Assembly: GCF_006345805.1 (NCBI RefSeq)
Contig: NC_043006.1
Span: 5,022,001-5,086,000, forward strand
Direction of reading: 5' to 3'
DNA length: 64,000 nucleotides
Source of the DNA: Octopus sinensis
Taxonomy: Eukaryota
Part shown: in pieces, positions 6,524 to 61,705 of the stretch
How the letters are laid out: every line of letters begins with the position of its first letter
How positions within the stretch are numbered: the stretch's first letter is position 1
Position numbers and translations under genes: made by a program
Notes under the pieces: generated by a model
Seen by the model: only the letters and a program-made list of their open reading frames with translations
The model's database searches: none
Told to the model about the DNA's origin: nothing

Positions 6524-7079
6524 CTGCATGCTTGTATAGCCGAAAAGTCTCTTAGATATGTTTACTTATCGTGGCATGCTTCTTTGCCGAGAATTTCTCT
6601 CTATCTTCGAGCTCAGATTTCGTTTTCATTTCTAAACATTTCCGTCGTGAGTATTATTCATTGTTTATTGGTATTCGTAATTCTATTTGTTATTGTTCAG
6701 TCCACCGAGTGAGTTCTGCTCCTCTCATTCTCTAAACACACTACTTTGTTTATTATGACGGCAACGTCCAATAAGGCCGCATAGTGCAGCTGGGTTTTGC
6801 TTCGTCCTATACGTTCTTGGACCGAAAACCTTTTCTCATGCTGGGTGTTCATATCGGAGAAATATTCTCTTTCCCCCTCCTCCTCCTAAGACTCTTTACA
6901 GAATAAAGTAGACAATTAGTTAATGACAGAACATAAACCACCACTAGTACACATGCACAAACTGAGAGAATAAGAAATGAAGGGTGTTCATGATTGGGGG
7001 TGGTCTGTATTTACGTCTGCATAATTACTAACATTATATAATACGAATGACATTCTCTCTCTCTCCCTCTCTCTTTTTC

Positions 7080-7223
7080 TATATATATACGTGTATATAT
7101 ATATATATGTGTGTGTGTATATGTATGTGTATTTATATATGCGTATATATATGTGCATGTATGTATGTATACATGTATATATGTATACATGTATATACAC
7201 ACACACACACACATATATATATA

Positions 7224-7270
<47 letters not shown>

Positions 7271-7905
7271 GTATATGTGTATATATATGCATGTGTATAT
7301 ATATATATATGTGTATATATATGCATGTGTATATATATGTAATTATATATACTTATATGTATATATATATGCATGTGTATATATATATATGTATATATAT
7401 GTATGTGTATATATATATATTTATATATATGTATGTGTATATATATATATATATGTATATATATCTATATATATATATGTGTGTGTGTATATACATATAT
7501 ATATGTATATGTGTATATATGTGTATGTATTTGTATATGTATACATAATATATATATATATATATATGTGTATATATATATATATGTATATGTGTATATA
7601 CATATATGCATGTGCATATATATATATATATGTGTATATATATATGTATATGTGTATATATATATATTATATATATGTATATGTGTATATATATATGTAT
7701 ATGTGTATATATATATGTATATATATGTATGTGTATATATATATATTTATATATATGTATGTGTATATATATATATATATGTATATATATCTATATATAT
7801 ATGTGTGTGTGTATATACATATATATATGTATATGTGTATATATGTGTATGTATTTGTATATGTATACATAATATATATATATATATATAATGTATATAT
7901 ATATA
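7080..7905. repeat. Degenerate (TA)/(TG) minisatellite array
   Basis: Direct reading. Source of the spurious Y/I/V/C-rich ORFs. Confidence 0.95.
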
Positions 7906-8265
7906 TTATTGTTCCTTCTTACGAAATATATAGAACTGATTAAGAAGTGCTCGGATCGAACCCGAGACAAACGATAAAAAAAAGAAACTTGTCAGTCCTT
8001 TTTCCCACACTTCTTTCCATGTATCCCACATGGGTTTTATTTGCATGTATTTTTTATGTATATTATATATATATATTATATATATATATATTATTGTTCC
8101 TTCTTACGAAATATATAGAACTGATTAAGAAGTGCTCGGATCGAACCCGAGACAAACGATAAAAAAAAGAAACTTGTCAGTCCTTTTTCCCACACTTCTT
8201 TCCATGTATCCCACATGGGTTTTATTTGCATGTATTTTTTATGTATATTTATATATATATATATT
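7906..8265. repeat. Tandem duplication, 185-bp period
   Basis: TTATTGTTCCTTCTTACG... starts at 7906 and 8091. The non-microsatellite part is identical. Confidence 0.95.
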
Positions 8266-11799: not shown

Positions 11800-13229
11800 G
11801 CAAAAATTTTAGAAAATTAAAAAAGAAATAAGTGGAAATTTTACCGGTGAGTGTTTTAAATTATAAGGTACTAAAAGACAATGACTCTCCCCAGACACAA
11901 CAGAATATGCTTCAACACACGAACTCACATAAAGAATCTTACAAACCAAATCCAAAAACGATTATAAAGTACTTCACTGTAAATCCTGAGTTCCTTTCAT
12001 TGGATTTCCTGCAGCATACAGAATATTATAATCAAACTATCATAAAGAAGAATTTAGTATTATACATCTTCAAAATTTATATTTTAAAGCATTATTCTCC
12101 GAAACATGTTGCTACTGGTTAAGTGTCCTTATTTCCTTTGACGTAGCAATTATCTGCATTTAGTTGATTTAAATTCAAGTGTGTTACAGTACATATTCAT
12201 CCAGCGTAGACATTCCCTATGCAGCTTTGTTCAAGGTTTTACCTATGCGGATGGGTGAAGCGAACTGAGGATGCAAGTATAAGATAGGCCTTCTTGTGAG
12301 ACCATTATATCTGAGAGTACAAGAGTGTTGAAATACGCTATGACTAGAGTTCTATTATCACTTAAAATTAGAATGGCATTTTTTTTTAGATATTAAGGGA
12401 ACACATCATTTTATACTTTTACTTGTATAAAGAACCTTAAATAGGTCAAGATGTATTCACACCACTGACCACTCATAATGAAGATAGATGATATATTTAA
12501 AAAGATTCGAAAGAAAGAGGAAATATAAATATGTCATGTGGGTAATCTGTCCAGTCTATAGGAAGAAAGCATTAATCGAGAAGAATGAAGTAAATCGGAA
12601 AAGAAAAGCCAACAACAAAATATAATTGTGAAGTTTAGAGCAACTAACATATGTACCTTTGCGATTATTTGCCCAGGTCAACTTGTGTGCCCTTTTATCC
12701 AAGGCATCATAAAGAAGAATCGAGAATTGCACATCTCTAAAATTTATTTATTGCAACAAATTTGACAGTTTTTTACGTGCTCATAGATGACTAAAATATC
12801 TTTCTTGCACGATGTAATTCTCTCTCTCTCTCTCTGTCACTCTCACTCTCTCTCACACACATACATATGTGCATGTATGCATGTATGTATGTATGTATGT
12901 GTGTGTGTTTGTATGTATGTATGTATGTATGTATGTATGTATGTACGTATATACATATATTTTTAATAATATATTATTATTAGTAGTATCAGGAAATTAA
13001 TAATAATAATATATTATTAAAAAATATATGTATATATCGCTCGTATTAAATATATAAATACTTTAATAGTATTAACATTTTTATACAATGGAGCACTCAA
13101 TATAAAGTCAGTATATAATATTCTTATTGAATATATTTACCTCAAGATTTATGTATGTACGTATATAGAAAAATCATTACTAATTCAAGCAAATGGTAGT
13201 ATAAAAGAAATAAATGAAGTTGAAAATAT

Positions 13230-17749: not shown

Positions 17750-19720
17750 TTAACCCTTGGTCTACCAGAGAGAATGTCTGTCATTAATTACCAACTGGAT
17801 CCAATGGATTCAATATTTTTCTTTTTATTAAATTTTATTGAAACTACCATTACATTTTAGCTACATTATATATGCTATCAGGTGAATGAAGAATTACTTT
17901 TTCTCACTAATTTTAATAAAAGAAATATATGACCATTCCTAAATACAACAAAAGAAATATAGCTGACAGAATATATTATAAATTTCAAAATTACAAAAAT
18001 ACAGAATTACAGCTCTTCAAGGTAGTGAATGCAGACAACATTGGAATGTTCTTGGCAAACATGGATATTACAATTCTTACATGTAGTACGAGTTTTCCTT
18101 GTCTTTTTTGGGGCCACCAAAAAAACATCTTCCTTTTTTCTTTGGTTGTGAAATCTCAAAAGAGGTTGAAGATCGTCTTCTTTTCTTGTTTGGTTGAAGA
18201 ATGTTAGCGGAACTAGAAGATTGTTTGTCATGTTCTTGTCTAGCATTAACTCCAACAAGTTCCTTTCCTAACTGAATTAGGCATTGTCTTCTTTTATCCT
18301 TGAAACTTTGCAAGTGAAGCTGTTTAGAGAAAATGAAAGCATTCACTGCACTTATAACAATCATCTAGAATATAACCATAGGCCATCTTCGAGTCATTCT
18401 TCAGCAAGTGTATGTCCTTACCATCTTATCTGGGGTATCTATTCCTCCTTTTGTTTTGCTGTAACATATAATAACTTTAGGTTTCTTTTCAGCATTTTTT
18501 GAATCAATTGAAGGCTGAGAGTGCATTGTACTCATAAGTGTGAATACATAATTTTTCTTGGAACAATAAGATAGGATCATAGAATCCTCTGGAAATCCAA
18601 ATATTGTGCTGTTGATTTCTCTTTCTTTTCCATTTGCGAAAGTACTTGGAAGTTCAACACTGTTCCTTCTCATTCTTCCAACTAAAACAGTTTTCTTGCT
18701 AAGCATCTTTCAAGCCAATCCTAGACTTGTAAAATATTGTCACAAGTTATATTGCAATCAGTATTTTTAAGTTCTTTTCCTAGGTCTTCAACAACTTTTG
18801 AACCTTGATTTGTCTCTCTCCCTTTACTGGGTGTTTTCCAGTGTAGATTTGCATTTTCCAGGCATAAGATGTTTCACTGTCGCATATTGCTCAAATTTTA
18901 ATTCCATATTTCCCTGGTTTTGAAGGAATATATACCCGGAATGGGCAGCGCCCTCTGAATGAAACAAACTGCTCATCAACTGTCATGCATGAACTTGGAG
19001 CATATCCATCTTTCAAATTCTGATTCTACATTTCAAATACTTCTCTTATAGGCTCCAACGTATCATCACTTCTCTTTTTTCTTCTTGCACTAGCATCCTC
19101 AAAACGCAATACGCATAAAATATGTTGAAATCTTTCCCGGCTCATAATTTTGTTGAATATTGGGCGGCCATCTTCTTGACTCCATAACTGTGTGACATTT
19201 TCATGTTTAGATTTATAAACACCTATAAGAATAATCAGTCCAATAAATTTCTTTACTTCAGAATGATCAATTTCCTTCCATTTATATTAGCAAACAACCT
19301 GACCTTCAGCATTTGTCAATTTACGAATTACTTCAAGAAGATTCTGGTACATAAAGATAGTAAAACAGGTTTCAATGCTATCGCAAGACCTTTTAGCGAA
19401 ACAGGATGGTCCACATTCTTGGCGCACAATATTGCCAAATGAAGTTCTTACTGCTGCTTGAGTAAGAGGATTAGGATGCCAAACTTCTAGTCTGTCTCTA
19501 GAAACATATTGCTCATTCATAACTGAGTGGCTTGCAGATAATTGTTTTTGAGTATTTTCATCCTCTGATGACGCAGAACCTAAACTGTCCAGCACAAACC
19601 ACTTTCACCATCATCTTCAGAGCAATAGAAGGAATCACTTCTATCTTCTTCCCATTCTTCATCTAATTCGAATAACCTTTTCGATATTTGGTCTTCACGC
19701 AAATTTTTACGTCTAGGCAT
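17750..19720 (-). mobile_element. Degenerate piggyBac transposon (PGBD4-like transposase pseudogene)
   Basis: TTAA-CCCTT terminus at 17750-17758. ATG at 19720. Motifs VLVGRMRRNSVELP, TLMSTMH, YSKTKGGIDTPD and C-terminal CKNC..VCQEH. Multiple frameshifts. Other TIR not found. Confidence 0.88.

Positions 19721-34085: not shown

Positions 34086-34088
<3 letters not shown>
33782..34088 (-). mobile_element. SINE family C, tail type Y
   Basis: Same head/core as 32184-32560, unrelated tail. Confidence 0.88.
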
Positions 34089-34116
<28 letters not shown>

Positions 34117-34339
34117 ACATATATATATATATATTTAGAAATAGCAGTTTAATACTATTCTACTACCATAAGATATCTCCCAGATAGCAATACTCTCAAC
34201 TCACACAGGCAAAGAGGAAAAAATAACGAATCCACCCGGCTTTGATTAACTATATACGCGTTTCTGGATTAAAGATATGTAAAATAACTCATACCTTATT
34301 TCCGTCAAAGTTGAACGGTGAACTTTTATGCTCCTTTTT

Positions 34340-34378
<39 letters not shown>

Positions 34379-34591
34379 TCCTCATTCCTTTACTCCTGTC
34401 CTCTTTGTCATCATTTTATTAATCTGTACCCTTCTCCTTTTCCCTATTTTTACCCGGTGACGGGTACTCTGGGATATCCCAGAAACAGATGCAAGACTTT
34501 GAATCTTTTCTTTTCCAATAATAATATTGTATATGACTTGAGATGTCTGCCTTACATTTACGTTTGTTGTCCTCTTTAACAATTATATGTA

Positions 34592-34677
<86 letters not shown>

Positions 34678-34971
34678 TGTATGTATGTATGTATGTATGT
34701 ATGTATGTTTTGTACAAGACATTGTAGATCTTCAGCTGGGCTAAAAAGTCACATTCGATCACAGCACCAGTAACAGTTAAGCTTCGTGCAATGGCCATAC
34801 TCGATAACGAGGGGGCAGCCATAATGTATGTATGCATATATATATATATATATTATATATACTTATATATATATATACATACACACACATAAATATATAT
34901 ATAATTTTATATACTTATTGCAGGCACATATGCATCCAAACATGCACACAATCTCATGCTTGCGCACACGC

Positions 34972-35016
<45 letters not shown>

Positions 35017-35241
35017 ACATATATATATATATATATTTAGAAATAGCAGTTTAATACTATTCTACTACCATAAGATATCTCCCAGATAGCAATACTCTCA
35101 ACTCACACAGGCAAAGAGGAAAAAATAACGAATCCACCCGGCTTTGATTAACTATATACGCGTTTCTGGATTAAAGATATGTAAAATAACTCATACCTTA
35201 TTTCCGTCAAAGTTGAACGGTGAACTTTTATGCTCCTTTTT

Positions 35242-35284
<43 letters not shown>

Positions 35285-35512
35285 TCCTCATTCCTTTACT
35301 CCTGTCCTCTTTGTCATCATTTTATTAATCTGTACCCTTCTCCTTTTCCCTATTTGTACCCGATGACGGGTACTCTGGGATATCCCAGAAACAGATGCAA
35401 GACTTTGAATCTTTTCTTTTCCAATAATAATATTGTATATGACTTGAGATGTCTGCCTTACATTTACGTTTGTTGTCCTCTTTAACAATTATATGTATGT
35501 GTGTGTGTATAT

Positions 35513-35560
<48 letters not shown>

Positions 35561-35900
35561 TGTATGTATGTATGTATGTATGTATGTATGTTTTGTACAA
35601 GACATTGTAGATCTTCAGCTGGGCTAAAAAGTCACATTCGATCACAGCACCAGTAACAGTTAAGCTTCGTGCAATGGCCATACTCGATAACGAGGGGGCA
35701 GCCATAATGTATGTATGCATATATATATATATATATTATATATACTTATATATATATATACATACACACACATAAATATATATATAATTTTATATACTTA
35801 TTGCAGGCACATATGCATCCAAACATGCACACAATCTCACGCTTGCGCACACGCATAACACACACACACACACACACACACACATACGACACACACACAC
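34085..35900. repeat. ~900-bp tandem duplication bounded by (CA)n
   Basis: TTAGAAATAGCAG.. at 34135 and 35037. Only a few SNPs plus microsatellite length differences. Confidence 0.95.
34702..34825 (+). mobile_element. Probable RTE-type LINE extreme 3' end (C2H2-like motif + 3' UTR). Duplicate at 35585-35708.
   Basis: CMFCTRHCRSSAGLKSHIRSQHQ* followed by ATGGCCATACTCGATAACGAG. Embedded in (TGTA)n. Confidence 0.55.
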
Positions 35901-37362
35901 ACCTTACACTATTCATCTAAAATTGTCGACCATAGAAAAACTCCTGTCAAACCTTTGACATAAATACCTAGAAAATGCGCAACGACGACATCTTGCTCTA
36001 CAATCCCACCCGACACAGTGAATCATATTTGCACCCTTATATTATCTATACTTTTCCAAACTACTGACTAATGATGAAAGGAAGTTCAGCAGCAACTATT
36101 GCCAGTCATCTCAATTCCTCTGCTTTTCTCAACGGATTCTTTTACAGTTTTATCTCTCGTCTGTTTACAAATATTTCACTTTCTTTTTTCGTGACTCCCT
36201 TTAGTAACGTTTGCAGTCTTAACATTCAAAGTGTCAAATTATCGTATTTTCAAAGATTGTCAGCGTTGCATTTTTAAAGTCACATTTTGCTTTCTTTCCA
36301 CACCCTTAAACACTAGAATATTTTTGTAATATATCTAAAACAAGATTTTTACAAACGCAGATTAATATAATTTTTTCTTGGTGAATTTTTACATTCTTCA
36401 ACGAACTCTTGTCTGCGTTAATAGTTAACAAAAAGGAAAACAAGTAAAACAAAGAAAAAAATGTATTTTCAAGGAGTGTTTGGAATATTTTCTATTAGCA
36501 GTAACTTGCTGCTTAAAATCTAGTATCACCGATTATACTTGTGGTACATGGAACATTTCAATCATCAATTTCGAAAAGAACAGAAGTTACCTATTTTGAA
36601 ACCATGTTCTGCCTAAATGTGTTTTCCCTTATTTTAGAATCAACTGCAAGGAAGCAGTTTTCAAATAAAATTAACTGATTCGTTATCGAGATGGATGTTG
36701 TATCTATAGCCTTTACGTGCTTAGAGAACCACTTCCAAAGAAGAATCACTCCACATTCTCTCGAAAGTTTATATATTCTTATGACGTCAACAACATATAA
36801 TTCTCGCTGGTAAGAATTAAGTTTCTAAAATGGATAGATAAATTCGCAAGATTGCTTTGGTGCAACGGAAGAATTTTTGTCACGTCAACAGGAGACGTAG
36901 CTTCGTGTCTCACCGACACCCTTCAGCTTTTTTCTATCTAAAAGACGCTTTCAACACAATATTTAAATGCTATTATTTATAGCATTCTAATTCCAAAAAG
37001 GAAATTTTTTTGTTGCTTTTCACATCAAAATTATTTGACTTGTAAACACTATTTTCCTCTGTTTTACAAATGCCTTTGATTTCATTAATTTCTCGAACAA
37101 GTGTCAATGAAGAAATTTCAGTTGAAATTTCTACATATTTATTTAAAAAGTACGCCTAGTTTCATACGTTAACTCATATATACTAAAGTACTATGATATT
37201 GATCGACAGATATTACCATTCACATAACAATAATCTTAATTTGACTTAGAAATAATCAGACACTGTCAATTCCGCTGCCTAATTGCGTGATCTGCACGAG
37301 TGAATATTAGAATATGCAGTCAACAGAATTTGCAGAATGGGCAATAAGTTAGTAGTAAGATA

Positions 37363-40699: not shown

Positions 40700-43600
40700 T
40701 ACCAGCACACAGTCGACGCTATGGCGACCAGAGGAAACCGTTCACCCGAACTATCGAGTAATTCTTGTGATACAGAGCGATGAACAACCTGAGGAAGCCA
40801 TGGTCCAGGCCAAATATCGCACGCACAGTTGCCAGGTATCGAAGTTCGACCCTATCAAAAGCTTTAGATTGGTATAAATGCACCAATGCCCTACCTTTGC
40901 CAGAGTTATCATCAACCATCTCTATGGTATAGCGAATAAGGTGGAGATTATCCTGAATGGTTCTGCCTGGGATGGCACATGTCTGTGCCTCCCCGACAAT
41001 ACCATCCGCAGCACGTGCCAACATTTTTGCTAAGACCTTGGCCAAAATCTTCACTTCTGCGTTTCACAGAGTGATGGGCCTGAAGTTATCTAAAATGTCC
41101 CCTTGTCCGGATCCTTTCTGACTAACATCACTACTCCCTGCGTGTCGCGAATGGTATTGTCGAGGAGGCACAGACATGTGCATCCCAAGCAGAACCATTC
41201 AGGATAATCTCCACCGTATTCGCTATACCATAGAGAGGGTTGGTAAATAATCTGGCTTAGGTGGGGAATTGGTACATCTGGACCAGTCTAAATCTTTTGA
41301 TAGGGTTGACCATCGATACTTGGCGACTGTGCTTGTGCGATTCAGCCTAGTCCTTGGCTTCCTCAAGTGGTTTATCGCTTTGTATCACAACATTGACTCG
41401 ATAGTTCGGGTGAACGGTTTCCTTTCGAAGCCATTCTGTTGCCAGTTCGCGTACATGTCAGCCACTAGGTGCCCGAACAAGTCTGGCATACATTTATACA
41501 GCTCGTACGGAAGACCATCATGTCCCAGCGACTTACCCGCTTTACAGTCGGCCATAGCCTCCATTATATCCACAGGCGTGATCAGGACGTGGTCAAGAAC
41601 TTGCCCAGGTCACGAAAATATTCACTTTGCGGGCCTATAACCTTGGGTGCATAAATTGCAACCAGCCTGATTATCTTGCCACAACTGAATAGCAGGTCAA
41701 GAACGATTAACCTGCCTTCTGGATCAGAAAAAAAGAACAACTTTTTCTCGGCTACCCGGTTTCTTTTTAGTAGGACCAACACCCCGCCCCCACCTCCCGC
41801 ACGATTCGGAGGAGCAGATCTCTTGGCCTCTTCACCCGGGTTTCCGTTGCAACAATCATATCCCATTTTCTTGATCTGATGTCATTTAGGAAGCGCCCTT
41901 ACTTCCAGCTTGACATCAGACCACGAACATTTACACAACCAATGCGAATAGACATTATTTACATATTTAATCCGGGTTGTCCTCTAGAGAGGGACTCTCC
42001 ACCTTTTCTTCATATAGGGTCGGAGGTGGCAAGTCTTGAAAAATGGATTGATTAAAATCCAATCTCATCATCGACACCGGCTTTCTATACGCGTTAAGTA
42101 ATACATTACGAGTCTTTTTATCCATTTCGTTGAACTCGTAGTTCTTATATTTATCAGAAAGTTCTGCAATCCTCGTGGTGATCTTTTCGCTTTTATTTCT
42201 CTCATTAAATTCATTTTTGGTTTGTCTCTTTTCGCAGTGTTTTTTTTTTTTTTTTTGGTCTTAGTTCGCCCTGTTTTTGTTGATTTGAGCTCTCCATTTT
42301 TCTCTTGTTATTAGTTGCTTTCTTTTCTTCTGTTTCTCTCTCTCTTCCCTCCTCCTCCTCTTCCTCATCGGATTCTTTCTCACCGTCTCTACAGTGTTTT
42401 TTTATATGGCCCAGCTGGCTACACTGGAAACATCGGGGCTTACAGCCCTCGACGAATACGTTAAGGAATCCCTCCCCAATTTCTATTTTCTCCTGTAACT
42501 GTTCTAAAATTGACGGTTCTGCTTGTATTAGGAGGTGAACCGTTTGACCGGTCCAATAAGCATTTTCTGTGATGGTAGCCTGAAAGAGTGTTATATTATC
42601 TTCTTTTTCGCCAGGACTGCCTCCATCAATCACATAGGGTTGACTTGAGGTGTGGCTCTTGGTATACGTATCTTTGACGTCTGCATTTCCATGTATATTG
42701 GAATTAAGACAACGACCTCCGTTTGTAAAGATTTAACTGAGGGCATTTGTGCAGTTTCTATATCTTTTAGTCGTACTTCGATAGTACCAAACTTCTTCCC
42801 TCTGGCTAGGTATGTGATATCCTGCCAGATGGGTTTCAAGCACTTCTCTCTTCGCTCACCTGATCAATTTTTTTCCTTTTAGACAGTAAGATTTAAAATT
42901 AATTGTTTTTCTTTTTTCTAACATTAATAGTTCTTCCGGGGATTGAACTTTCACAACACCGTCTTCAATTGTTATCACATCTTTGTACTTGAACAGGTCA
43001 TTTTTGTTTGTCGACAGCTGGCGGGTTCCACCTCCAGCCGCTGACGCAAAAATTTTTTGTTTAATTTCTTCTGTTTGAAGGCTTTTCACGTCAATATTCC
43101 TCTTTTCAAAAGAACATATTGGGGAAATTCATTTTCAGAAGAATCCGAAATTTCGCTAAATATTAAACTTCCAATCAAATTTGCCTCCCTGTTGGTTGAC
43201 GACTCTTCGCCAGACGAAGTTATACTTTTCGGCATCTTGCCAGCAATTAATGTCCCCCCCCCACACACACACACTCCAACATTCATTTCTCTTTAGCCCT
43301 CACGTCACACAGTTGTTAATGTTTATTGACCCAAAGCGAGCTCTGGTCGCCATAGCATATTCCAAAATTCCAGTCTTATTGAACCTGTTAAAAAGATTTT
43401 GCTCCTGAAAAATGAAGGTCATGGAGCTCTAAAATGTGAGAGTATAGGCCCCTGTTGGGTGTGGGCATCTTAATGTCAACTAGAGAAGTTGAATTGTTGA
43501 GAATCTTTTTTACTTGGGTCTTATATCTTTTGTTTGAAATTCTTTGAAATAGGAAATATATGTTCACTGGGTTTGTAAAAGAGAGCAAAGCTACAGGAAA

Positions 43601-43760
43601 CCAAAAGACGTGCACGATACCGAGAACTCTTGAAAGTAAAATCGCCGCTTCGTGCCTCGTCGATAACACACGGACACACACACTCGTGGTCTTCGTCGTA
43701 CTCAGCTCTGCTTTCGCTAGACAGTAGGTAGGGACAGTGGGAATCTGCTCGCCTTTGATT
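40700..43760 (-). mobile_element. Tx1/L1-clade LINE copy 2, rearranged and 3'-truncated
   Basis: Frameshifted ORF1 with CCHC knuckle RCFQCSQLGHIKKHC. APE start GCVNVRGL at ~41955. RT fragments in both orientations. Confidence 0.9.
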
Positions 43761-43860
43761 CGTTCACTTTCTTGAGATTTCCCTTTATTTTGAGTGGACG
43801 GTCCCACTGTTATCACAGCCAGTACCCTTCTCCCCCGTTTAAAAAAGAATAGTGACGAAA

Positions 43861-45622
43861 TTCTTTATTAGTAAAGAGAAAATAAAATACACTATTTTGC
43901 CTCACGAGGCAGGGCTTTGAGTCATGTCCGGTGTTATTTTTATTGATAATAAGATTTTCTCAATAGGACTCAACCCCACCGAAGCTAGGCCTTAAAGCCT
44001 TGCTACCCCTCGCAGTAAAAATAAAATAAAGTAATTAAAAAAAAATAATAAAAAACACTGCAGGGTCACCAACAAACCAGCCTCAGTCAAAAAAAAAACA
44101 AAAAAACTTGAGGACTTCACTGAGGGGGTGTTATGTTGGGGTCGGTGAGGAAATAGGCTTATATGTGAGGGCTAATCCCTCAACATATTATAAGTACCCG
44201 ACACTGTCTCGTCAAAGCCTATTGAGCCACTAGATCTTACTTGCACCGGAGATGACTCGTTGTCCCATGCAAGGGAGGGCCGTAATTCGGCCGACCGCAT
44301 TTGGGTATTGCAGTCAGCCTGACGTGTGGGCCTCATTCCGGACCCACAGGCCACCAGTTTGTCGGCGCCTGGCTGCCATATGTTTCTTAACTTGTTATCT
44401 ATGAAAAACATGTCACTATTCTTTGCGGCATTTAACTAGGGATCGTGACCGAAACGATAAAGTAGAACTTAAAGGAGGCGCATTACCAGCCCCACCGAGA
44501 GAGGCAAGCTAAGCTACTAAACCTAATCTCAAGGACCTCACGGCCACCCACTCAAGTCCGGGGACAAACAGCAAGCAGCCCCACCCGGGAACTATTTCCC
44601 CCAGGAACTTCCTGGGGGACTCGTCTAGGCTAAGCAGGGCCTGTGAGTGTATCCACCCCAGACCTGAAGCGGTGCTCAAGAACGAGCCACCCTAAGATAA
44701 AAGTCTAACTAAGGAAACCTCAACCGGCGTGTGAGGCGATAAAACAACACAAAGGGCAAATAAAGAGGATACGGCTAAATTCCCCAGTCACAACAACCGG
44801 CTAGACCATTAACATCAAAGGGCGCCCATCCCTATAGTAATCACCCCCAAAATGGAGGCAAGAGAAAAGGGCCTTCACTCTATACTGCTACCAGGCAGCT
44901 GCCCGACTATAAAAGCCGGACAGTCTCTCATCTACAGCCCGTGAAGGGCTCTATTCTATAACACCGTCGCCCGGGTACTTAGCTCACAGGCCCCTCCACG
45001 CTGGCACAGGAGGATCCGGCGACCCCTCACACAGGAATCAACCAGAACCCCAGGCCTCACCCAAGCCAACTCACTGGCTCTATAAAAGAGTCACAAACTT
45101 CACCTTAATGTCCCCAGACAGAACCGCCCACTATCCATCATCAGCAAACAAGAGAACTAACCGGGCCAGTCATTAATGACCAACACGGACCTTAAGGGGT
45201 CGGCCAGCGGCCGCCTACCTAACCTAGCAGGGAGGCATGCACCCCCCTATCTGAATCGCCCACAATCCACTAGGTCCCCACCAAACTATATTGGAACCGC
45301 TTTGGAGAAGGAAGGAACGTTTAGTTTGTCCAGTGCGAGGTCTTTATTCGGCATTGCGCAATGCATATCCGGCATCGATCCCACACGGACGTAAGCTCTC
45401 TTACCACGCCAAGGTAGTGTCCAAAAGGTGAAGCCTAGCAGTGCATCCACCTGCCGAGTAAAAGACAGTGAACAAAGTCCACTGAATCCCGACAGGTCAT
45501 AACATACCAGACCTATCTGTTAATGCATCTACCTGTTAATGTATCCACCTGTTAATGCATCCACCTCAAAGAGGTCATAAGAAACAGGTCCTAAGAAACA
45601 GGTTATAAGAAACAGGCCCCAC
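43861..45622 (-). other. Unclassified ORF-less structured element joined to 28S at the R2 site (candidate non-autonomous rDNA insertion element)
   Basis: Begins immediately after 28S CTCTCTT. Terminal 14- and 16-bp tandem repeats, many hairpins, T-rich 3' region ending TAATAAAGAA. No long ORF. Confidence 0.5.
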
Positions 45623-46061
45623 AAGAGAGTCATAGTTACTCCCGCTGTTTACCCGCGCTTGGTTGAATTTCTTCACTTTGACATTCATAGCACTGGGCAG
45701 AAATCACATCGCGTCTGTGCGGCTCGGCCGGCTACGCGATGCTCTGTTTTAATTAGACAGTCGGATTCCCCCGGTCCGTACCAGTTCCGAGTCGACCGTT
45801 CGCCGTCGGCCGAACGCCTGCCGCGCGTCGCGGTGCGCGACGACGACCGACCCCTGACGGAGCCGAGCCGCGCGCGCACCGACGCGACGGCGAGCCCGAA
45901 GCCGTGTCGCTCCACGGCGTCCCGGGTGTGGCGCCGTTTTGTTCGCGCCCACTACGCCCCGGATGACGGTCTGGCATTACGGGAGACGGACGATCGAGCG
46001 GCGGCGGCTCGCGCGCGAGATGATGAGGGCCTCTCAGCGAGCGCCGCCCTGTCGGGTCGGG
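45623..46061 (-). rRNA. 28S rRNA: 28S rRNA gene fragment (GC-rich D8 expansion through helix 69), non-functional ectopic copy
   Basis: Minus strand GGGGAATCCGACTGTCTAATTAAAAC...GACGCGATGTGATTTCTGCCCAGTGC...GCGCGGGTAAAC.GCGGGAGTAACTATGACTCTCTT matches the universal LSU core. Confidence 0.97.
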
Positions 46062-46255
46062 TTATAAACTTGAAACCTACTAGAATATCATAGATTATAT
46101 ATAGTAAGTCATCCAATCAGTTCTGTCCAATTTTACCCTTTTTTTTAGATTTGAATGAAATTTAATAGTATTTTCAAATGTCTAATTCAATTAAAAATTA
46201 TTTTTATGCATTTGTGTACGTTTAAACTAATTCAATATTGTTTTACAAAATAATA

Positions 46256-47578
46256 GAGGGTGTCCACTAAGTCTGCGTACATGGGGATTAACATAGTTTT
46301 AGAACAAACCAATTTTATTTAATTATAATGTTAATAAATAATATTTTCAAAGTGATTTCCATCCTTTTTCAATGCATAACTTGATGCGCCTTGCAAAATT
46401 CAGGTGAACTTGATTAAATAAGTCTACATTGCCATCAATTTCAGCACACCGACTGGTAATGCGTTCTCTCATGTGTTTTAAATCTGTAATCTTTATTGTA
46501 ATCTTTCTCTTTCAACATACCCCAGAAAAAGAAATCAAGGGGAGAAAGGTCTGGTAAACGAGGGGACCTTTCCATATGAGCCCTTCTTCCAATCCAGCGA
46601 AGAAAAGTGTCATTAAGCCAATCTCTAACAGTTGTGGCAAAATGGGTAGGGGTCCCATCCTGCTGAAACCAATTCGGAAGGCCCTCGCCTAGGCGCTCAA
46701 TTTGAGATATTAATTTGTCTCAATATGTTTACATAAGTCTCATCCGTTACATGTTCAATGAAGAAGGGTCCTAGAACATGAGCTTTCCACAAACCACACC
46801 ACACATCACCTTTTTGCTGCCTTGCTGTTAGGATTGATCCATCTAATGTGGATTACCTCGAGACCAGTATAGAAGATTCTGTCTGTTGACCTCACCATTT
46901 ACATAAAACGTAGCTTTGTCACTGAACAACAAAGTTTTTCGTAAAATTGATATTTTCATCGACTTTATCAGAAAACCATTCGCACGTCTACATTCGTCTA
47001 TCAGGGTCGTCTTCATTTAAGTGATGCAATATCTATAGGTTGTATCGATGAAACTTTTCCTCAACCAGCATTTTGTGGATGGTTGGTTTTGGAACACCTA
47101 ACACCGTGGATGTCCGACGAAGTGATTTCTTTGGGCTAGCAGAAACTTTAGCCATGACAGCCTCTTTCGTTTCATCCGAAGTCTTTGGTCGCCCGGAACG
47201 GGGTTTATCCAAAACACTGCCCGTTTCTTTAAATTTCTTGATCAATTTCCCGACGGCAGTAAAAAAAAAAATTGGTTACCTATAAGAGTGTCGAACATTA
47301 AATTCTTCCGCAATTTTGCGATAAGACCATCCTTCTCGTCCACTTAATAATACTAACTCGATTCTTTCTTCTTTAGACACATACATCATTCGATCTGGGA
47401 TTCTTTCTTCTTTAGACAGAGCCATCATTCGATCATCTGTAGAAAAAATAACAAATAAATTTAGAAAAGTAAAGTATTTTTTAAATTTAATTTAAACAAA
47501 AGTAAAAAAGGAAAATTATTTCTTATATTTGTTTATGTTATGATTTTATTCCATGTACCCAGACTTCGTGGACACCCT
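46256..47578 (-). mobile_element. Tc1/mariner DD41D (rosa/VS-like) transposon with both TIRs, transposase pseudogene
   Basis: TIRs AGGGTGTCCAC(T/G)AAGTCTG(C/G)GTACATGG. Motifs GSVLDKPRSGRP and FQQDGTPTH..WIGR..PDLSPLDFFFWG (40 residues between the Ds in this copy). Confidence 0.9.
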
Positions 47579-50222: not shown

Positions 50223-53200
50223 TTATGTTGTATCATTCACTCGCAACTTTCGTGCTACATCTTTCCATCGTTCTTCATACACTCTCTTAGTCAGGCATAT
50301 TCTCTCCATCTCTATCTTCCTTTTCAGGTGAAAGATGAAATAATTCATCAAACCAGGGCCGGAGATGAACTTGCCTGACTGTAAACCTTTCATTCTCGTC
50401 TTCCATATCACCTCTTTCGCAATTGCTACTACAACGAGAAAACGAAACTTACCTTCATTCGCGAGGAAATCCGGTGGGTCAATTTTTGTAATCGACTCAG
50501 TCGACAGCTGTACTCTTCGTGTACTTGACAACAGCTGTTCGGCATAAACCCACACCTCAGACACGTCCGGACAATGAACAATAGCGTGCGGGACGGTTTC
50601 CCTATCCCGCCCGCATCTTGGACATATCGGACTGTCTTGGCCACCGTGCCTTGCGAGTTTATCCCGAACAGGTAGAGCTCCTCTGTAGCATTGCCATGCC
50701 AGAGACTTCTGGAAGTTGTCCAGTGTCTTCGGCTTGAACGTACGTCGGAACAAACTGGCCAGCTGATTATCGTCGAGACCTAGGGTTTTCCCCAAGGTAT
50801 CTTCACATTCCGCCTCTACCAACCCTCTATAGAAGAATGTGGTGGAAACCCCACCGCAGGCGTTGCCCGAGCGACGGAATAGCAGGAGAGCCTTGCGACA
50901 CTCCGTGTACCAAGTGCCAAGTTTCGATCTACGATTCAGCCAGGTTTCCCATCCACCGAAACTAGTGAACTTGGGAAACATCAGTTTTGCTAGCGGAGAC
51001 CACACCCGTTCACCATCCAGGTAGAGCCACAGATGTCCTAACCTCAGCGCATGTCTGCGCATCATCAGCCAAGGCATCCCTAGCCCACCCTTTAACGGTT
51101 GTTGACAGCAAGTAGAGCGTTTCACAAGTGGTTTCCTGCCCTTCCACAAGAAGTAGAAGAGCTGTCTTTCCAACTTGGTCAACCACGAATCAGGGCAAGG
51201 AACGACGGAAAGGCGGTAGGTGATAACCGATGCGATAAACACATTGGCCACCTCCGCCCTCCCTTTCAGGGATAGCCACCGCCAAGACCAGGTCTTGGTT
51301 ACTGCAGCCACCCTGCTCGATACCTCGCCCCAATTCTTCTCTATTTGGAGGTCTGGACCGAACCAGACCCCTAGCAATTTAATCGGACCCTCCGTCCAAC
51401 GTCCCACGACGCTGTCAGGAGGCATCGACCTGAGGAAGCCAAGGCTCAGCCCGAACTGTGCCAGGGCAGATACCAGGTAACGATGGTCGACCCTATCAAA
51501 TGCTTTAGATTGGTCTAAATGGACCAGTGCCCCACCCTTGCCAGAATCGCTATTAAACCCCTCTATAGTGTACCGCATAAGATGGAGATTATCCTGAATG
51601 GTTCTGCCAGGAACGGCACATGTCTGTGCTTCCCCGATCAGACCATCCGCGACACGCGCCAATCTTTTCGATAACACTTTGGCCAAAATCTTCAACTCTG
51701 TGTTTAGCAGAGTGATGGGCCTGAAATTATCAATGCACTCCCCCTTGCTCGGGTCCTTTCTGACGAGTGTCACTACTCCCCGGCGCACAGATCTGGGTAT
51801 AAGCCCGTTCTGCTGCCAGTTCGCATAGACCTCCGCCAGTAGGTGCCCGAACAAGTCTGGCATACTCTTATATAACTCATAGGGTAGACCATCCAAACCC
51901 GGCGCCTTGCCCGCGCCGCAGTCCGCCATTGCCTCAACCACCTCCACAGGCGTGATTGGCCCTTCACAGCCCTCCGCATCTCGCCCCGATAAGCGCGGTA
52001 GCCCGTCGAGTAGGTCCGTAAAGGCCCTCCTCCTATCCAGTCTGCCGCACTCACCGAAAAGCTGAGCGAAGTGCTCCTGAAAGGCCTCACACATCTCCTC
52101 GGGCTCGTTTATCAACTCACCTTGTTGGTTCGTCATAGATCGAATCGTGGCATCGTTACCACGCTTGGCTTCCACCACTCGGGCCCATCTCACGGCGTTG
52201 ATTCCTTCACATCCTATTGCGCGGATCCTAGCCCTGACAATGCAGCCCATGTGTTTGGCCTCGAGGTGCTGGTTTAACACCAGTCTCTTGGACGCCACCT
52301 GAGCCGCAGAGCCAGTTTTCAAGGCTTCCTCTAATTCCTTAACTAGAGTAGTTTCCCTCCTAGCCTCTCTAGCCACTACTCCTATGCTATATCTAATCGA
52401 CTCGAACTTGATGGCTCGTTTGAGGGCGTACCACCATTTGTTATTAATGATGGTACCAGATAGTGCCCTCTGAATTATAGTCCTAATCCGGTCTTTGTAC
52501 TCCTTAATCGCCAAATGGGACGTATTAAGTTTCCAGTAACCGGATCCTCTATTTTTAACCTTATCTATGTCAAGCTTACAGGTGACCATTTTATGATCAC
52601 TGTAGCTGACCAGGTAAAACTGTGGACACTTAGCTATTTTTCTGTCTACTTTTCTAATTAGTATTCTATCTATATATGACCTGGAAGATCCGTCGCTGTT
52701 TGACCATGTCCACAATGGAGCGTTCGGAAATTCCAGCCTATAAGGATCTGCTAGCTCAAAGCGGCTTAGCAGTTCCATGAAGCCACTGTTACCTTTTCTA
52801 TCTGAACGCGAGCCAACACAATCTACATCCGCTTTGTAAATTGTGTTAAAGTCACCTAGCACAACTAATGAATGCGAAGTACCAAGAAAGTTTTCTAGTT
52901 CACGAAAATAATCACTTTGCCCTGTATGGTTGGGTGCGTAAATTGCAACCAGTCTGATAACTTTACCGTTACTGAACGTCAAATCCATGACGACCAGCCT
53001 ACATTCTGGATCTGCAAAAATTAACTTTTTCTCAGAAACCCGGTTTCTTTTTAATAGGACCAACACCCCACTCCCGCCTGTAGGACTGCCAGGAGAGAAA
53101 AAACTCTCGTAGCCGTCAAACAGCGGGAGTAGACCTCTTGGCCCCTCTAACCGGGTTTCTGTAGCAACAATAACATCTAAATTACGCGACCTGAAATCAT

Positions 53201-53273
53201 TAAGGAAGCGACCTTGCTTCCAGTTTGATCCCAGGCCGCGCACATTCAAACAACCAACATAAATGTAATCCAT
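50223..53273 (-). CDS. Tx1 ORF2 (APE endonuclease + internally deleted RT + C-terminal Cys motif), 1016 aa
   Basis: GCLNVRGL, ATET, VLGDFN, SYSDH (APE). KAPGLDG, FRPITLL, LDQSKAFDRVDH (RT). No QGCPLS or YADD. CPRC..ET..H..C near the C-terminus. Confidence 0.9.
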   Translation of the reverse strand: MDYIYVGCLNVRGLGSNWKQGRFLNDFRSRNLDVIVATETRLEGPRGLLPLFDGYESFFSPGSPTGGSGVLVLLKRNRVSEKKLIFADPECRLVVMDLTFSNGKVIRLVAIYAPNHTGQSDYFRELENFLGTSHSLVVLGDFNTIYKADVDCVGSRSDRKGNSGFMELLSRFELADPYRLEFPNAPLWTWSNSDGSSRSYIDRILIRKVDRKIAKCPQFYLVSYSDHKMVTCKLDIDKVKNRGSGYWKLNTSHLAIKEYKDRIRTIIQRALSGTIINNKWWYALKRAIKFESIRYSIGVVAREARRETTLVKELEEALKTGSAAQVASKRLVLNQHLEAKHMGCIVRARIRAIGCEGINAVRWARVVEAKRGNDATIRSMTNQQGELINEPEEMCEAFQEHFAQLFGECGRLDRRRAFTDLLDGLPRLSGRDAEGCEGPITPVEVVEAMADCGAGKAPGLDGLPYELYKSMPDLFGHLLAEVYANWQQNGLIPRSVRRGVVTLVRKDPSKGECIDNFRPITLLNTELKILAKVLSKRLARVADGLIGEAQTCAVPGRTIQDNLHLMRYTIEGFNSDSGKGGALVHLDQSKAFDRVDHRYLVSALAQFGLSLGFLRSMPPDSVVGRWTEGPIKLLGVWFGPDLQIEKNWGEVSSRVAAVTKTWSWRWLSLKGRAEVANVFIASVITYRLSVVPCPDSWLTKLERQLFYFLWKGRKPLVKRSTCCQQPLKGGLGMPWLMMRRHALRLGHLWLYLDGERVWSPLAKLMFPKFTSFGGWETWLNRRSKLGTWYTECRKALLLFRRSGNACGGVSTTFFYRGLVEAECEDTLGKTLGLDDNQLASLFRRTFKPKTLDNFQKSLAWQCYRGALPVRDKLARHGGQDSPICPRCGRDRETVPHAIVHCPDVSEVWVYAEQLLSSTRRVQLSTESITKIDPPDFLANEGKFRFLVVVAIAKEVIWKTRMKGLQSGKFISGPGLMNYFIFHLKRKIEMERICLTKRVYEERWKDVARKLRVNDTT

Positions 53274-53282
53274 TACTTACCT

Positions 53283-54627
53283 TTATATCAGTGGTTCGGT
53301 TTTTTCCTTTTCTTCTTTGTTTATCTCTTTTTCTGGGCCTCGTGGGGGAGTCTGACGTAGGCCCTCTAATATATATGGAGATGTTAAATCCATTCTGAGC
53401 GGGCCTACGTCGTGAAAGAATTCGGACTTTATCCGCCCGTAATCCTTCCGGCCTATTCTGTAAACTATATAGTCATTCTTTTTTCCTATTTTTTCCACTT
53501 TGGCCATAGCTGCCAATACGTTCCCGAGTCTGTTGTTTGATGCCTTAATGGCCATATATGAGTTCATCGACTCTCTTTTCTTCTTTTGGATCACTCTGGG
53601 AGGGGTGGTTTCCGTTTTTCTTTTTTTTCTGGTGATTTTTGACCACCCCTCCTCATTGCTCTTTTTTTCCTCTGCCGCTGGTTCTGCTGCCTTTGTCACC
53701 TCCATACCTTCAGTCGTCCATTCTGGGCTGTCTGGCGCTGCTTCTGGTGACACTTCATCTTCCTTTCCACCTGGCTGAGGTGCTTCCTGCGGTTTGGGTT
53801 GGGGTTGGCATTCCGCCCTTACATGACCCTTCTTGCCGCAGCCGAAGCACCTCGGCTTTCTGCCCTCTACGAAAACTGTTACTCTATCTTCTTCACTTAT
53901 TTTTAGCGTTTCTGGAATCTCCTCCAGTGTTTGAATTTCTGCCTGAATGGCTATTACTATCCGCTGTCCTTTCCAGAATTCCTCCTCCTCTACTGTGACC
54001 TGGAGGATGTTTATTTTTTCCTCCAGGCCTACCATGACTGCTGCCACCAGACATTCGGCATCTGCCTCTGGCGGAATGTTATTCATCGTGATTTTCGATG
54101 TTCTTTTTCCTCTATACAAGGGGAGGAGAACAATGTTCTCCGCTTTTATTGGCTCCATCGACAGTTTTTTTGCTATCTCCTCTGTTGTGAAACGCACCTC
54201 TACTGTGCCGTATCTCTTTCCTCTGTTGATGTATGTGATCTTGTCCATTAATGGTTTTAAACAATTCTCGATTTTTTTCCTCAATTTTTTGTATCATTTT
54301 GCTTGTCGTATTAAAGGTCTTATAGATTATTCTTCTTTTTTCGATTTCTTCATGTTTTTGGGCGTTTGTGACCACTGTCACTTCCGTGCCCTCTTTTGTA
54401 ACACAGTCCGCATATTTCTTTAAGTCTTCGACGTTTATTTTTTTGATTTTCTTACCCGCTACTTCTGAGAATTTTTTCGCTGGTGCTGGTGCTGGTGCAG
54501 GGGTTTCCATTTTCTTTGGCGCCACTGCCTCTTTTTTCTTTGGCGACACCGCCTCTTTTTTCTTTGGCGACACCGCCGGAAATTCTTCTTCACTAGTCAC
54601 GGGAGAATATGAGATGGGGGATTCCAT
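53283..54627 (-). pseudogene. Tx1 ORF1 (gag-like, CCHC knuckle) split by a +1 frameshift
   Basis: ATG at 54627. Frame change at the A7 run (54272-54278). RCFGCGKKGHVRAEC. Homologous to ORF1 of copies 1 and 2. Confidence 0.85.
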
Positions 54628-61449: not shown

Positions 61450-61705
61450 GCATATTCCAAAATTCCAGTCTTATTGAACCTGTTAAAAAGATTTTGCTCC
61501 TGAAAAATGAAGGTCATGGAGCTCTAAAATGTGAGAGTTAAGGCCCCCGTTGGGGGTGGGCATCTTAATGTCAACCAGGGAAGTTGAATTGTTGAGAATC
61601 TTTTTTACTTGGGTCTTATATCTATTGTTTGAACTTCTTTGAAATAGGAAATATATGTTCACTGGGTTTGTAAAAGAGAGCAAAGCTACAGGAAACCAAA
61701 AGACG
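61450..61705 (-). mobile_element. Orphan Tx1 copy-2-family 5' UTR fragment (further piece inverted at ~61853-61900)
   Basis: Near-identical to ~43357-43610. Confidence 0.9.

What the first reader, a model, noticed from the sequence alone, without database searches (positions are those of the whole stretch)
43861..46061. 28S rDNA fragment ends at the R2/L1926 hotspot and continues into an unknown 1.76-kb non-coding element
Seen: on the minus strand the 28S match stops at ...AACTATGACTCTCTT (45623), followed by GTGGGGCC.. instead of AAGGTAGCC. Then come 1.76 kb with no long ORF, ending in a T-rich tract and TAATAAAGAA (43861-43870). I could not find the downstream 28S flank. Known: R2 retrotransposons nick at TTAAGG|TAGC, 4 nt away. 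L1926 group I introns, I-PpoI and Pokey also use this site, and non-autonomous R2 parasites (SIDEs) exist in Drosophila. Inference: this is an ectopic copy of an rDNA unit carrying a site-specific, protein-free insertion, perhaps retrocopied from a Pol I read-through transcript. That would be a possibly undescribed rDNA parasite in a cephalopod.
Basis: partly seen in the sequence, partly recalled or inferred. Interest (0 to 1): 0.82.

Follow-up and report, generated by a model that had tools for sequence, protein, structure and literature searches.

The report
Stray 28S fragment broken at R2 site
A stray, dead piece of a large-subunit ribosomal RNA gene is interrupted at the spot where R2 jumping genes insert, by about 1.9 kb of non-coding DNA of unknown origin. 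This fits a well-known kind of rDNA debris, and nothing I could reach shows that the insert is a new mobile parasite.

Summary
The core observation holds. On the minus strand, a 439-nt 28S fragment (46061->45623) ends at ...AACTATGACTCTCTT. That is 4 nt short of the R2 junction TTAAGG|TAGCC, and non-coding sequence follows.

Genuine R2 elements in six fetched loci lose similarity to the window at this same coordinate. A uniform 4-bp 28S deletion at R2 5' junctions is already documented.

Two details of the finding are wrong:
- A short, diverged 28S-like island (43767->43709, 28S +37..+91) does lie downstream.
- The proposed end at 43861 has no support.

The insert has no R2 protein remnant and no significant similarity to any fetched R2. 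Rfam finds no HDV-like ribozyme or group I intron in it. It lacks the canonical R2 3' junction. I found no second copy in the window or in any searchable collection.

My best reading is a dead, ectopic fragment of a 28S gene hit at the R2 site by an R2-type insertion that is now ORF-less and rearranged at its 3' side. An active non-autonomous (SIDE-like) family remains possible but unproven, at about 0.2. The host taxon could not be verified. Interest is modest.

The parts
45767..46061 (-). GC-rich 28S expansion-segment part of the truncated 28S fragment; the fragment begins abruptly at 46061
   Evidence: GC 0.74 and CpG o/e 1.49 against 0.39 and 0.83 for the whole window. It is contiguous with the Rfam-matched core. 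It partly aligns to L002 (down to 45944, 81%) and L001 (77%).
45623..45766 (-). Conserved 28S core (Rfam model positions 2132-2277) ending at ...GACTCTCTT, 4 nt before the R2 nick
   Evidence: Only 2 substitutions at positions invariant in five reference loci (GCTATGAATG, AAACAGCGG). The variable helix differs from the relatives mainly by paired (compensatory) changes.
45517..45622 (-). 5' end of the insert: GTGGGGCC, then 3.5 copies of a 14-nt unit (CCTGTTTCTTAKRA) and 3 copies of a 16-nt unit (GGTGGATGCATTAACA)
   Evidence: Tandem Repeats Finder and repeat families D2/D3. Related GGTGGATRCA motifs recur at 45434-45451 and 44640-44657 (family D1).
44425..45516 (-). GC ~0.5 non-coding body of the insert, thermodynamically structured only on the 28S-sense strand
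   Evidence: No ORF, Pfam hit or R2 tblastn hit. For 44440-45180, z = -3.6 on the minus strand (0 of 80 shuffles fold as well) against -0.9 on the plus strand. A perfect 11-bp hairpin lies at 44597-44619.
43844..44424 (.). AT/T-rich 581-bp segment bounded by a perfect 13-nt inverted repeat; either a nested element or a closed 3' domain
   Evidence: Inverted repeat I6. Fold z is about -4.5 on both strands, which points to DNA-level symmetry. No target-site duplication was seen.
43768..43843 (-). Spacer between the inverted repeat and the 28S-like island; not significantly 28S-like or R2-3'UTR-like
   Evidence: p = 1.0 against 28S +1..+40. (p 0.09-0.47 against R2 3' ends).
43709..43767 (-). Isolated, diverged 28S-like island corresponding to 28S +37..+91 downstream of the R2 site, spanning the R1 site (placed from memory, 74 bp downstream of R2)
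   Evidence: BLAST and nhmmer hits to L001, L003, L009 and L010. Local-alignment score 56 against a shuffle maximum of 22.
43611..43708 (-). CpG-rich (o/e 1.74) stretch of unknown origin between the island and the next repeat
   Evidence: Not significantly similar to 28S +88..+333.
43355..43610 (.). Dispersed repeat that bounds the locus on the downstream side
   Evidence: 97% identical copy at 61450-61705.
46257..47578 (.). Mariner-like DNA transposon that bounds the locus upstream, after the 195-nt AT-rich spacer 46062-46256
   Evidence: 28-nt terminal inverted repeats 46257-46284 / 47551-47578. A transposase-like reading frame is visible.

Best explanation
This is a dead, ectopic fragment of a 28S rRNA gene that was interrupted at the R2 target site by an R2-type, target-primed reverse-transcription insertion.

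Inferred sequence of events:
1. An R2-class endonuclease nicked the gene at TTAAGG|TAGCC.
2. An RNA was copied into the nick.
3. The 5' end of the insertion was joined to upstream 28S with loss of AAGG.
4. The inserted sequence carries no protein. It is either an internally deleted R2 or a non-autonomous derivative.
5. The unit ended up outside the rDNA array, either as a DNA fragment or as a retrocopy of a 28S-insert co-transcript.
6. Its 3' side has been rearranged, so the canonical 3' junction is gone.

Shown: the 28S fragment, the junction position, the absence of coding capacity and the non-rDNA context. Inferred: that R2 machinery made the junction, and how the unit left the array.
For: - Junction position. 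28S identity ends at 45623, the same coordinate at which six loci with bona fide R2 elements diverge from the window. Their R2 has a zinc-finger/RT ORF, CTCTTAAGG|R2 5' junctions and, where the 3' end was read (L003), an R2|TAGCCAAATGCC 3' junction.
- Known junction type. A fixed 4-bp deletion of 28S at R2 5' junctions, and duplications of downstream 28S inside R2 ends, are documented (PMC3774820). Diverged 28S-like sequence inside R2 UTRs is documented in seven families (PMC5035012).
- Orientation. The downstream 28S-like island is in the same orientation and order, so the 1.86 kb sits inside a 28S frame rather than at a random fragment end.
- Precedents in other organisms. L001 is an isolated 28S fragment with a 1.06-kb ORF-less insert, a 5-bp 5' deletion and a precise R2 3' junction. 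L009 and L010 hold R2 copies with only ~150 nt of 28S flank.
- Ectopic context. No other rRNA match in the window, and transposons flank the locus.
Against: - No R2-specific feature lies inside the insert. There is no RT, RLE or zinc-finger remnant and no nucleotide similarity to the fetched R2s or to the L001 insert.
- Rfam finds no HDV-like ribozyme at E<=10, although the same search weakly detects the ribozyme of a real R2 (19.4 bits).
- The canonical, normally invariant R2 3' junction is absent.
- The downstream island is much more diverged than the upstream 28S: 4 substitutions and 2 indels in 59 nt, against 2 substitutions in ~150 nt. It is flanked by non-28S sequence, so the unit is not a simple 28S-insert-28S structure.
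- Only one copy is known.
Confidence: 0.45

Rival explanations
1. One reading: the insert belongs to an active, multi-copy, protein-free rDNA parasite (SIDE-like). It would live in the 28S R2 site and be mobilised in trans by an autonomous R2 (or other RLE LINE). This copy would be an escaped or retrocopied one.
For: - The junction is of R2 type.
- The insert is ORF-free although the adjoining 28S core has only ~1.3% damage, so loss of coding capacity is not simple decay.
- The insert body folds well only on the 28S-sense strand: z -3.6 against -0.9, with flank controls at -0.2 and -0.6.
- SIDEs exist in Drosophila (PMC3414825).
- L001 shows a second ORF-less R2-site insert in another organism.
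Against: - There is no second copy anywhere I could search.
- No ribozyme was detected. My own HDV-like descriptor fires about once per 70 nt in this window, so its hits at 45226 and 45399 mean nothing.
- No R2 3' junction and no significant 3'-UTR similarity.
- No autonomous partner is known for the host. Its R2 could not be retrieved, and the RT remnants in the window are ordinary LINEs.
- A genuine R2 5' UTR shows no such fold z-score, so the structure signal is not an R2 hallmark.
Confidence: 0.2
2. There is no mobile element. An rDNA fragment broke at, or was cut by R2 endonuclease at, the R2 site. It was then joined by repair to unrelated DNA, with a scrap of 28S captured as filler.
For: - The insert has no recognisable transposon feature.
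- The 3' junction is absent, and the 28S-like island is a short isolated scrap.
- The insert's composition is heterogeneous, with a GC-rich body and an AT-rich segment bounded by an inverted repeat.
Against: - The island keeps the orientation and order of 28S.
- The 4-bp deletion junction matches known R2 5' junctions (PMC3774820).
- The strand-specific fold of the body argues for a transcribed, structured RNA in the 28S sense.
Confidence: 0.2
3. A different site-specific agent is responsible: an R4/Dong-clade LINE at the site midway between R2 and R1, a group I intron at L1923-L1926, or a Pokey-type piggyBac element.
For: - 28S similarity resumes near +37, roughly midway between the R2 and R1 sites, where I recall R4 inserting (from memory).
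- R4 is listed for a mollusc, Biomphalaria (PMC10946416).
- The last exon base before the insert is U, as group I introns require (established knowledge).
Against: - R4 makes a 13-bp target duplication (PMC6895275), whereas here ~40 nt of target are missing. No RT is present.
- There is no Intron_gpI match at E<=10, and no AAGGTAGCC exon resumes after the insert.
- There is no TTAA duplication and no terminal inverted repeats at the insert ends.
Confidence: 0.05
4. Assembly artefact: a collapsed or chimeric join between an rDNA read and unrelated repeats.
For: rDNA and repeats are classic sites of misassembly. The unit is single-copy in the window and has odd, asymmetric flanks.
Against: - The join falls exactly at a biologically meaningful site.
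- A colinear 28S island lies downstream.
- The 28S core carries pseudogene-type substitutions at invariant positions, as expected for a real, old genomic copy.
Confidence: 0.07

Closest known systems
R2 non-LTR retrotransposon insertions in 28S rDNA
   Same: Same target. 28S identity ends within 4 nt of TTAAGG|TAGCC, as at real R2 5' junctions in L002-L008. A uniform 4-bp deletion junction is described for sow bug R2 (PMC3774820).
   Different: No ZF/Myb-RT-RLE ORF or remnant, no detectable HDV-like ribozyme, no precise 3' junction, and no sequence similarity to any R2 fetched.
R2 SIDEs (short internally deleted elements) of Drosophila (PMC3414825)
   Same: A protein-free insertion at the R2 site with an R2-type 5' junction.
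   Different: SIDEs are ~0.5 kb and have a proven ribozyme. Their ends are homologous to the resident R2, and they occur in many copies with junction variation. Here the insert is ~1.9 kb and none of these features could be shown.
R2 families carrying diverged 28S-derived sequence in their UTRs (fish R2Gs/R2Bs etc., PMC5035012) and the earwig R2 5' duplication of downstream 28S (PMC3774820)
   Same: A 28S-like stretch of lower identity than the true flank, associated with an R2-site insertion and with replacement of target sequence.
   Different: In the fish families the 28S-like part lies in the 3' UTR and true 28S flank follows the canonical 3' junction. Here the island corresponds to +37..+91 and no true flank follows it.
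Ectopic rDNA fragments ('orphons') carrying R-element insertions
   Same: A short 28S fragment plus an insertion, surrounded by non-rDNA. It parallels L001 and L010. From my own memory, similar type I/II insertion units outside the nucleolus organiser are described in Drosophila.
   Different: In L001 and L010 the canonical R2 3' junction is intact. In the window it is not.
Group I introns and the I-PpoI site at L1923-L1926; Pokey piggyBac elements
   Same: The same handful of 28S nucleotides is used.
   Different: No group I fold (Rfam), no exon continuity, no TTAA duplication and no terminal inverted repeats.

Membership tests
R2 retrotransposon | 5' junction in 28S at, or a few nt upstream of, TTAAGG|TAGCC | tested here: met
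   28S ends at CTCTCTT (45623), 4 nt upstream. Six R2-bearing loci diverge from the window at the same coordinate.
R2 retrotransposon | Uniform 3' junction: element end followed by TAGCCAAATGCCTCG | tested here: not met
   No such sequence is present. 43843-43768 against 28S +1..+40 is no better than shuffles. 28S-like sequence resumes only at about +37.
R2 retrotransposon | Single ORF with zinc finger/Myb, reverse transcriptase and restriction-like endonuclease | tested here: not met
   No stop-free stretch over 88 aa, no Pfam hit at or below E 0.1 (best E 0.11), and no tblastn hit with 8 diverse R2 proteins.
R2 retrotransposon | HDV-like self-cleaving ribozyme at the 5' end, with P1 often built with upstream 28S | tested here: inconclusive
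   There is no Rfam HDV-family hit at E<=10 in 43000-47000 or 45100-45700. The control R2 in L003 gives 19.4 bits, with GAGAGUC pairing to 28S GACUCUC. My descriptor hits are at background rate. R2 ribozymes vary too much for a firm negative.
R2 SIDE (non-autonomous R2) | 5' and 3' ends homologous to the autonomous R2 of the same genome | not testable with these tools
   No R2 of the host could be retrieved, and there is none in the window. No similarity to R2s of other organisms.
R2 SIDE (non-autonomous R2) | Many copies in the R2 site with variable 5' junctions | not testable with these tools
   The host assembly and reads were not available. No second copy in the window or in the protein and metagenome collections.
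Group I intron (L1923-L1926) | Group I catalytic core fold | tested here: not met
   No Intron_gpI match at E<=10.
Group I intron (L1923-L1926) | 3' exon resumes immediately (AAGGTAGCC...) after the intron | tested here: not met
   Absent.
Pokey / piggyBac | TTAA target duplication and terminal inverted repeats | tested here: not met
   The junction is CTCTCTT|GTGGGG without TTAA. No inverted repeat involves the insert's 5' end.
R4 / Dong-clade rDNA LINE | 13-bp target-site duplication at a site between R2 and R1; RT-encoding ORF | tested here: not met
   About 40 nt of target are missing rather than duplicated. No RT. The TSD figure is from PMC6895275.

The most novel reading that the evidence does not exclude
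The 1.9-kb insert is the first seen copy of an undescribed, protein-free, structured-RNA element that parasitises the 28S R2 site in a lophotrochozoan (reportedly a cephalopod). It would carry a diverged 28S(+37..+91)-like module near its 3' end, perhaps to pair with the target, and depend on an R2-clade enzyme in trans. The ORF-less R2-site insert in L001 hints that such elements may be widespread outside Drosophila.
Probability: 0.2. Interest if true: 0.6.

Novelty: new member of a known kind. Interest (0 to 1): 0.35.

Why it matters
If the insert proved to be a multi-copy, 28S-linked family, it would extend non-autonomous R2-site parasites (SIDEs) beyond Drosophila. In the literature I read they are described only from there (PMC3414825). 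It would also point to an R2-clade element in cephalopods. The library I searched reports R2 in only one mollusc, an oyster (PMC5035012).

R2 machinery is being developed for site-specific transgene insertion, so natural minimal templates are of practical interest.

As it stands, the locus is one more example of rDNA debris marked by the R2 hotspot. Its use is mainly as an annotation note and as a probe sequence for the check described in the next steps.

Tried and rejected
- Other copies in the window: self-BLAST and nhmmer found none.
- Other copies through proteins. A 79-aa ORF word search found none. A 77-aa piece run with HMMER against 1.84 billion representatives gave one irrelevant marginal hit. 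Exact look-ups of 10 ORFs, tried twice, found none in the collection.
- Exact DNA scans of JGI metagenomes with an internal hairpin and with the junction found nothing.
- Degraded R2 coding sequence: rejected.
- HDV-like ribozyme. Rfam is negative. My own descriptor found tempting cores at 45226 and near 45399, but it fires ~800-1000 times per strand of the window, so they are uninformative.
- Apparent nhmmer similarity of 43860-43795 to the R2 3' UTR ends of L009/L010. It is not significant once the 28S part is removed (p 0.09-0.47), so I rejected it.
- The idea that the whole downstream region is a long decayed 28S flank. Only the 59-nt island is significant, so I rejected it.
- Nested MITE for 43844-44424. 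The inverted repeat is real, but I found no target duplication, so this stays unresolved.
- Taxon check. An exact look-up of the window's LINE ORF2 failed. The 18S of the closest relative, L002, lacks the decapodiform Ceph18S primer sites (primers from PMC8074623), so the relatives' taxon stays unknown.
- CpG depletion as a clock: the genome-wide o/e is 0.83, so it is uninformative.
- Candidate TSD TTTCAAG (near 46062 and 43630): a 7-mer match at chance level (my estimate 0.15 expected), so not used.
Full report
**1. What is there**

On the minus strand, the only rRNA match in the 64-kb window is a piece of eukaryotic LSU rRNA (RF02543, 136.5 bits, model positions 2132-2333). Its alignment is essentially perfect from 45766 to 45623 and ends with GGGAGUAACUAUGACUCUCUU. 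Upstream lie 295 nt of very GC-rich sequence (GC 0.74, CpG o/e 1.49). This behaves like a species-specific expansion segment and starts abruptly at 46061, after an AT-rich spacer. After CTCTCTT the sequence continues GTGGGGCC... instead of AAGGTAGCC.

**2. Is the break at the R2 site, and is that more than chance?**

I used the antisense ORF that 28S encodes here to pull related rDNA from public assemblies, and then R2 proteins.

- L002 is an rDNA unit (18S, 5.8S, 28S). Its 28S is interrupted at ...GACTCTCTTAAGG|GTTGAG... by an element with a 1.17-kb leader and an ORF of more than 1015 aa with a zinc finger and RT.
- L003 is the same element complete (1220 aa, RVT_1). Its 3' junction is ...CCAGAAATA|TAGCCAAATGCCTCG.
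- L004-L008 carry a second subfamily.

In six of these loci (L002-L006 and L008), similarity to the window stops at window coordinate 45623. The window's 28S therefore ends 4 nt upstream of the R2 junction. A random break landing within +/-5 nt of that point in a ~4-kb gene has a prior of roughly 0.3% (my estimate). The 4-nt offset is not a new site. R2 5' junctions with a fixed 4-bp (sow bug) or 7-bp (springtail) deletion of 28S are published, as is a 22-bp duplication of downstream 28S at the earwig junction (PMC3774820).

**3.

A 28S-like piece does lie downstream, at 43767->43709. It corresponds to 28S +37..+91 after the R2 site and includes AGATTCCCACTGTCCCTACCTACT exactly. It is in the same orientation and order as a real flank. 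It is nonetheless only an island.

- Its local-alignment score is 56 against a shuffle maximum of 22.
- The 76 nt before it are no better than shuffles against 28S +1..+40.
- The 98 nt after it are no better than shuffles against 28S +88..+333.
- It carries 4 substitutions and two 3-nt insertions in 59 nt. The upstream conserved core has 2 substitutions in ~150 nt at positions invariant in five references.

So the unit is not a simple 28S-insert-28S structure that has decayed evenly. Either the island belongs to the inserted sequence, as diverged 28S-like stretches do in the UTRs of seven R2 families (PMC5035012), or the 3' side has been rearranged. A perfect 13-nt inverted repeat (43844-43856 / 44412-44424) straddles it.

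**4. Anatomy of the insert (45622 -> about 43768, ~1.86 kb)**

- It opens with GTGGGGCC, then 3.5 copies of a 14-nt unit and 3 copies of a 16-nt unit.
- A ~1.1-kb body follows, with GC ~0.5.
- Then comes a 581-bp AT/T-rich segment bounded by the 13-nt inverted repeat, and a 76-nt spacer before the island.
- No stop-free stretch exceeds 88 aa, and ten translated pieces gave no Pfam hit at or below E 0.1 (best E 0.11).
- tblastn with eight diverse R2 proteins, including a full-length one, finds nothing in it.
- BLASTN and nhmmer find no similarity to the leaders or 3' UTRs of the fetched R2s.

The body (44440-45180) folds much better than dinucleotide shuffles on the 28S-sense strand only: z -3.6, with 0 of 80 shuffles as good, against -0.9 on the other strand. 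The flanking controls give -0.2 and -0.6. The AT-rich segment scores about -4.5 on both strands, which points to DNA-level inverted repeats. A genuine R2 leader (L003) and the L001 insert show no such signal. The structure is therefore a property of this sequence and not an R2 hallmark.

**5. Ribozyme test**

R2 and its non-autonomous derivatives carry an HDV-like ribozyme. In the control R2s the core is conserved between subfamilies. Its P1 3' strand GAGAGUC pairs with 28S GACUCUC, which predicts cleavage 13 nt upstream of the junction. Rfam detects this core weakly (19.4 bits). In the window, no HDV-family or group I intron model reaches E<=10. A descriptor I wrote recovers the control but also fires about once per 70 nt across the window, so its hits in the insert carry no weight. 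The result is inconclusive and leans negative.

**6. Context**

The locus is ectopic.

- Upstream lie a 195-nt AT-rich spacer and a mariner-like element with 28-nt terminal repeats (46257-47578).
- Downstream lies a dispersed repeat with a 97% copy at 61450-61705.
- The window otherwise holds ordinary LINEs, including an apparently intact one at 50223-54284, and no R2.

**7. Copies elsewhere**

None were found by any of these searches:
- self-comparison;
- ORF-based searches;
- exact look-ups;
- two exact scans of JGI metagenomes.

None of these collections is known to contain the host genome, so the key prediction of the parasite hypothesis, many 28S-linked copies, remains untested. The host taxon could not be verified. 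The closest rDNA relatives come from marine metagenomes of unknown organisms.

**8. Parallels**

- L001 is an isolated 28S fragment in non-rDNA surroundings. It carries a 1.06-kb insert with a 5-bp 5' deletion and a precise R2 3' junction, but no R2 protein similarity and no Rfam ribozyme hit.
- L009 and L010 hold R2 copies flanked by only ~150 nt of 28S, arranged in tandem. L010 has 8x coverage against 126x for L009.

Ectopic 28S scraps marked by R2-site insertions are therefore a recurring by-product of rDNA/R2 biology.

**9. Verdict**

The most economical account is a dead, ectopic fragment of a 28S gene interrupted at the R2 site by an R2-type insertion that is now ORF-less and disturbed at its 3' end (confidence about 0.45).

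| Alternative | Confidence |
|---|---|
| A repair junction at the R2 cleavage site with unrelated DNA | ~0.2 |
| Another site-specific agent (R4-like, intron, Pokey); their defining features were tested and not met | ~0.05 |
| Misassembly | ~0.07 |

The finding is real but modest. It becomes interesting only if the genome-wide copy test listed under next steps comes out positive.

Noticed in passing
L001:5832-6900 (minus strand): An unknown marine organism has an isolated 28S fragment carrying a 1.06-kb ORF-less insert. The junctions are textbook R2: CTCTCT| with a 5-bp deletion, and |TAGCCAAATGCC. It has no similarity to that lineage's own R2 (L002/L003). It may be a SIDE-like element outside Drosophila.
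   Followed up: partly
L010:770-2150, 13000-13150, 18550-18770; L009:6331-18210: R2 copies are flanked by only ~150 nt of 28S and arranged in tandem, in a contig at 8x coverage against 126x for the rDNA-like contig of the same sample. At about L010 13003-13100 a ~32-nt unit made of 28S +1..+24 plus AACCACC is tandemly repeated at the R2 3' junction.
   Followed up: partly
L002-L008, first ~170 nt of R2 (e.g. L003:2277-2358): The HDV-like ribozyme core is conserved between two R2 subfamilies. Its P1 3' strand GAGAGUC pairs with 28S GACUCUC, which predicts self-cleavage 13 nt upstream of the junction.
   Followed up: partly
window 43844-43856 and 44412-44424: A perfect 13-nt inverted repeat encloses a 581-bp AT/T-rich segment inside the insert. 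The fold z-score is about -4.5 on both strands. It may be a nested MITE-like insertion or a closed RNA domain, but I saw no target duplication.
   Followed up: partly
window 44597-44619: A perfect 11-bp hairpin with a 1-nt gap (TCCCCCAGGAA/TTCCTGGGGGA) in the insert body. An exact scan of JGI metagenomes for it found nothing.
   Followed up: partly
window 45434-45451, 45517-45566, 44640-44657: The motif GGTGGATRCAYT..AGG recurs five times in the insert (three copies in tandem, two dispersed). cmscan loosely aligned one copy to 28S CAUGAAUGGAUUAACGAG. I did not test its significance.
   Followed up: no
window 46257-47578: A mariner-like DNA transposon with 28-nt terminal inverted repeats and a stop-interrupted transposase frame.
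   Followed up: no
window 50223-54284 (minus strand): An apparently intact LINE. ORF2 is 1016 aa, with a weak tblastn match to the R2 RT region (E 1e-8 to 1e-10; Pfam not run; the N-terminal endonuclease is my reading of the translation). An upstream 333-aa ORF1 is present. Diverged copies lie at 40787-41942.
   Followed up: no
window 43355-43610 and 61450-61705: A 256-bp dispersed repeat, 97% identical between the two copies. Its edge at 43610 bounds the rDNA-derived locus.
   Followed up: no
window 43611-43708: A 98-nt stretch with CpG o/e 1.74 (11 CpGs) between the 28S-like island and the dispersed repeat. It is not significantly 28S-like and its origin is unknown.
   Followed up: partly
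window 34086-35902: A ~0.9-kb tandem duplication (96% identical). Extensive TG/CA-type microsatellite-like arrays lie at 7047-7943 and elsewhere.
   Followed up: no
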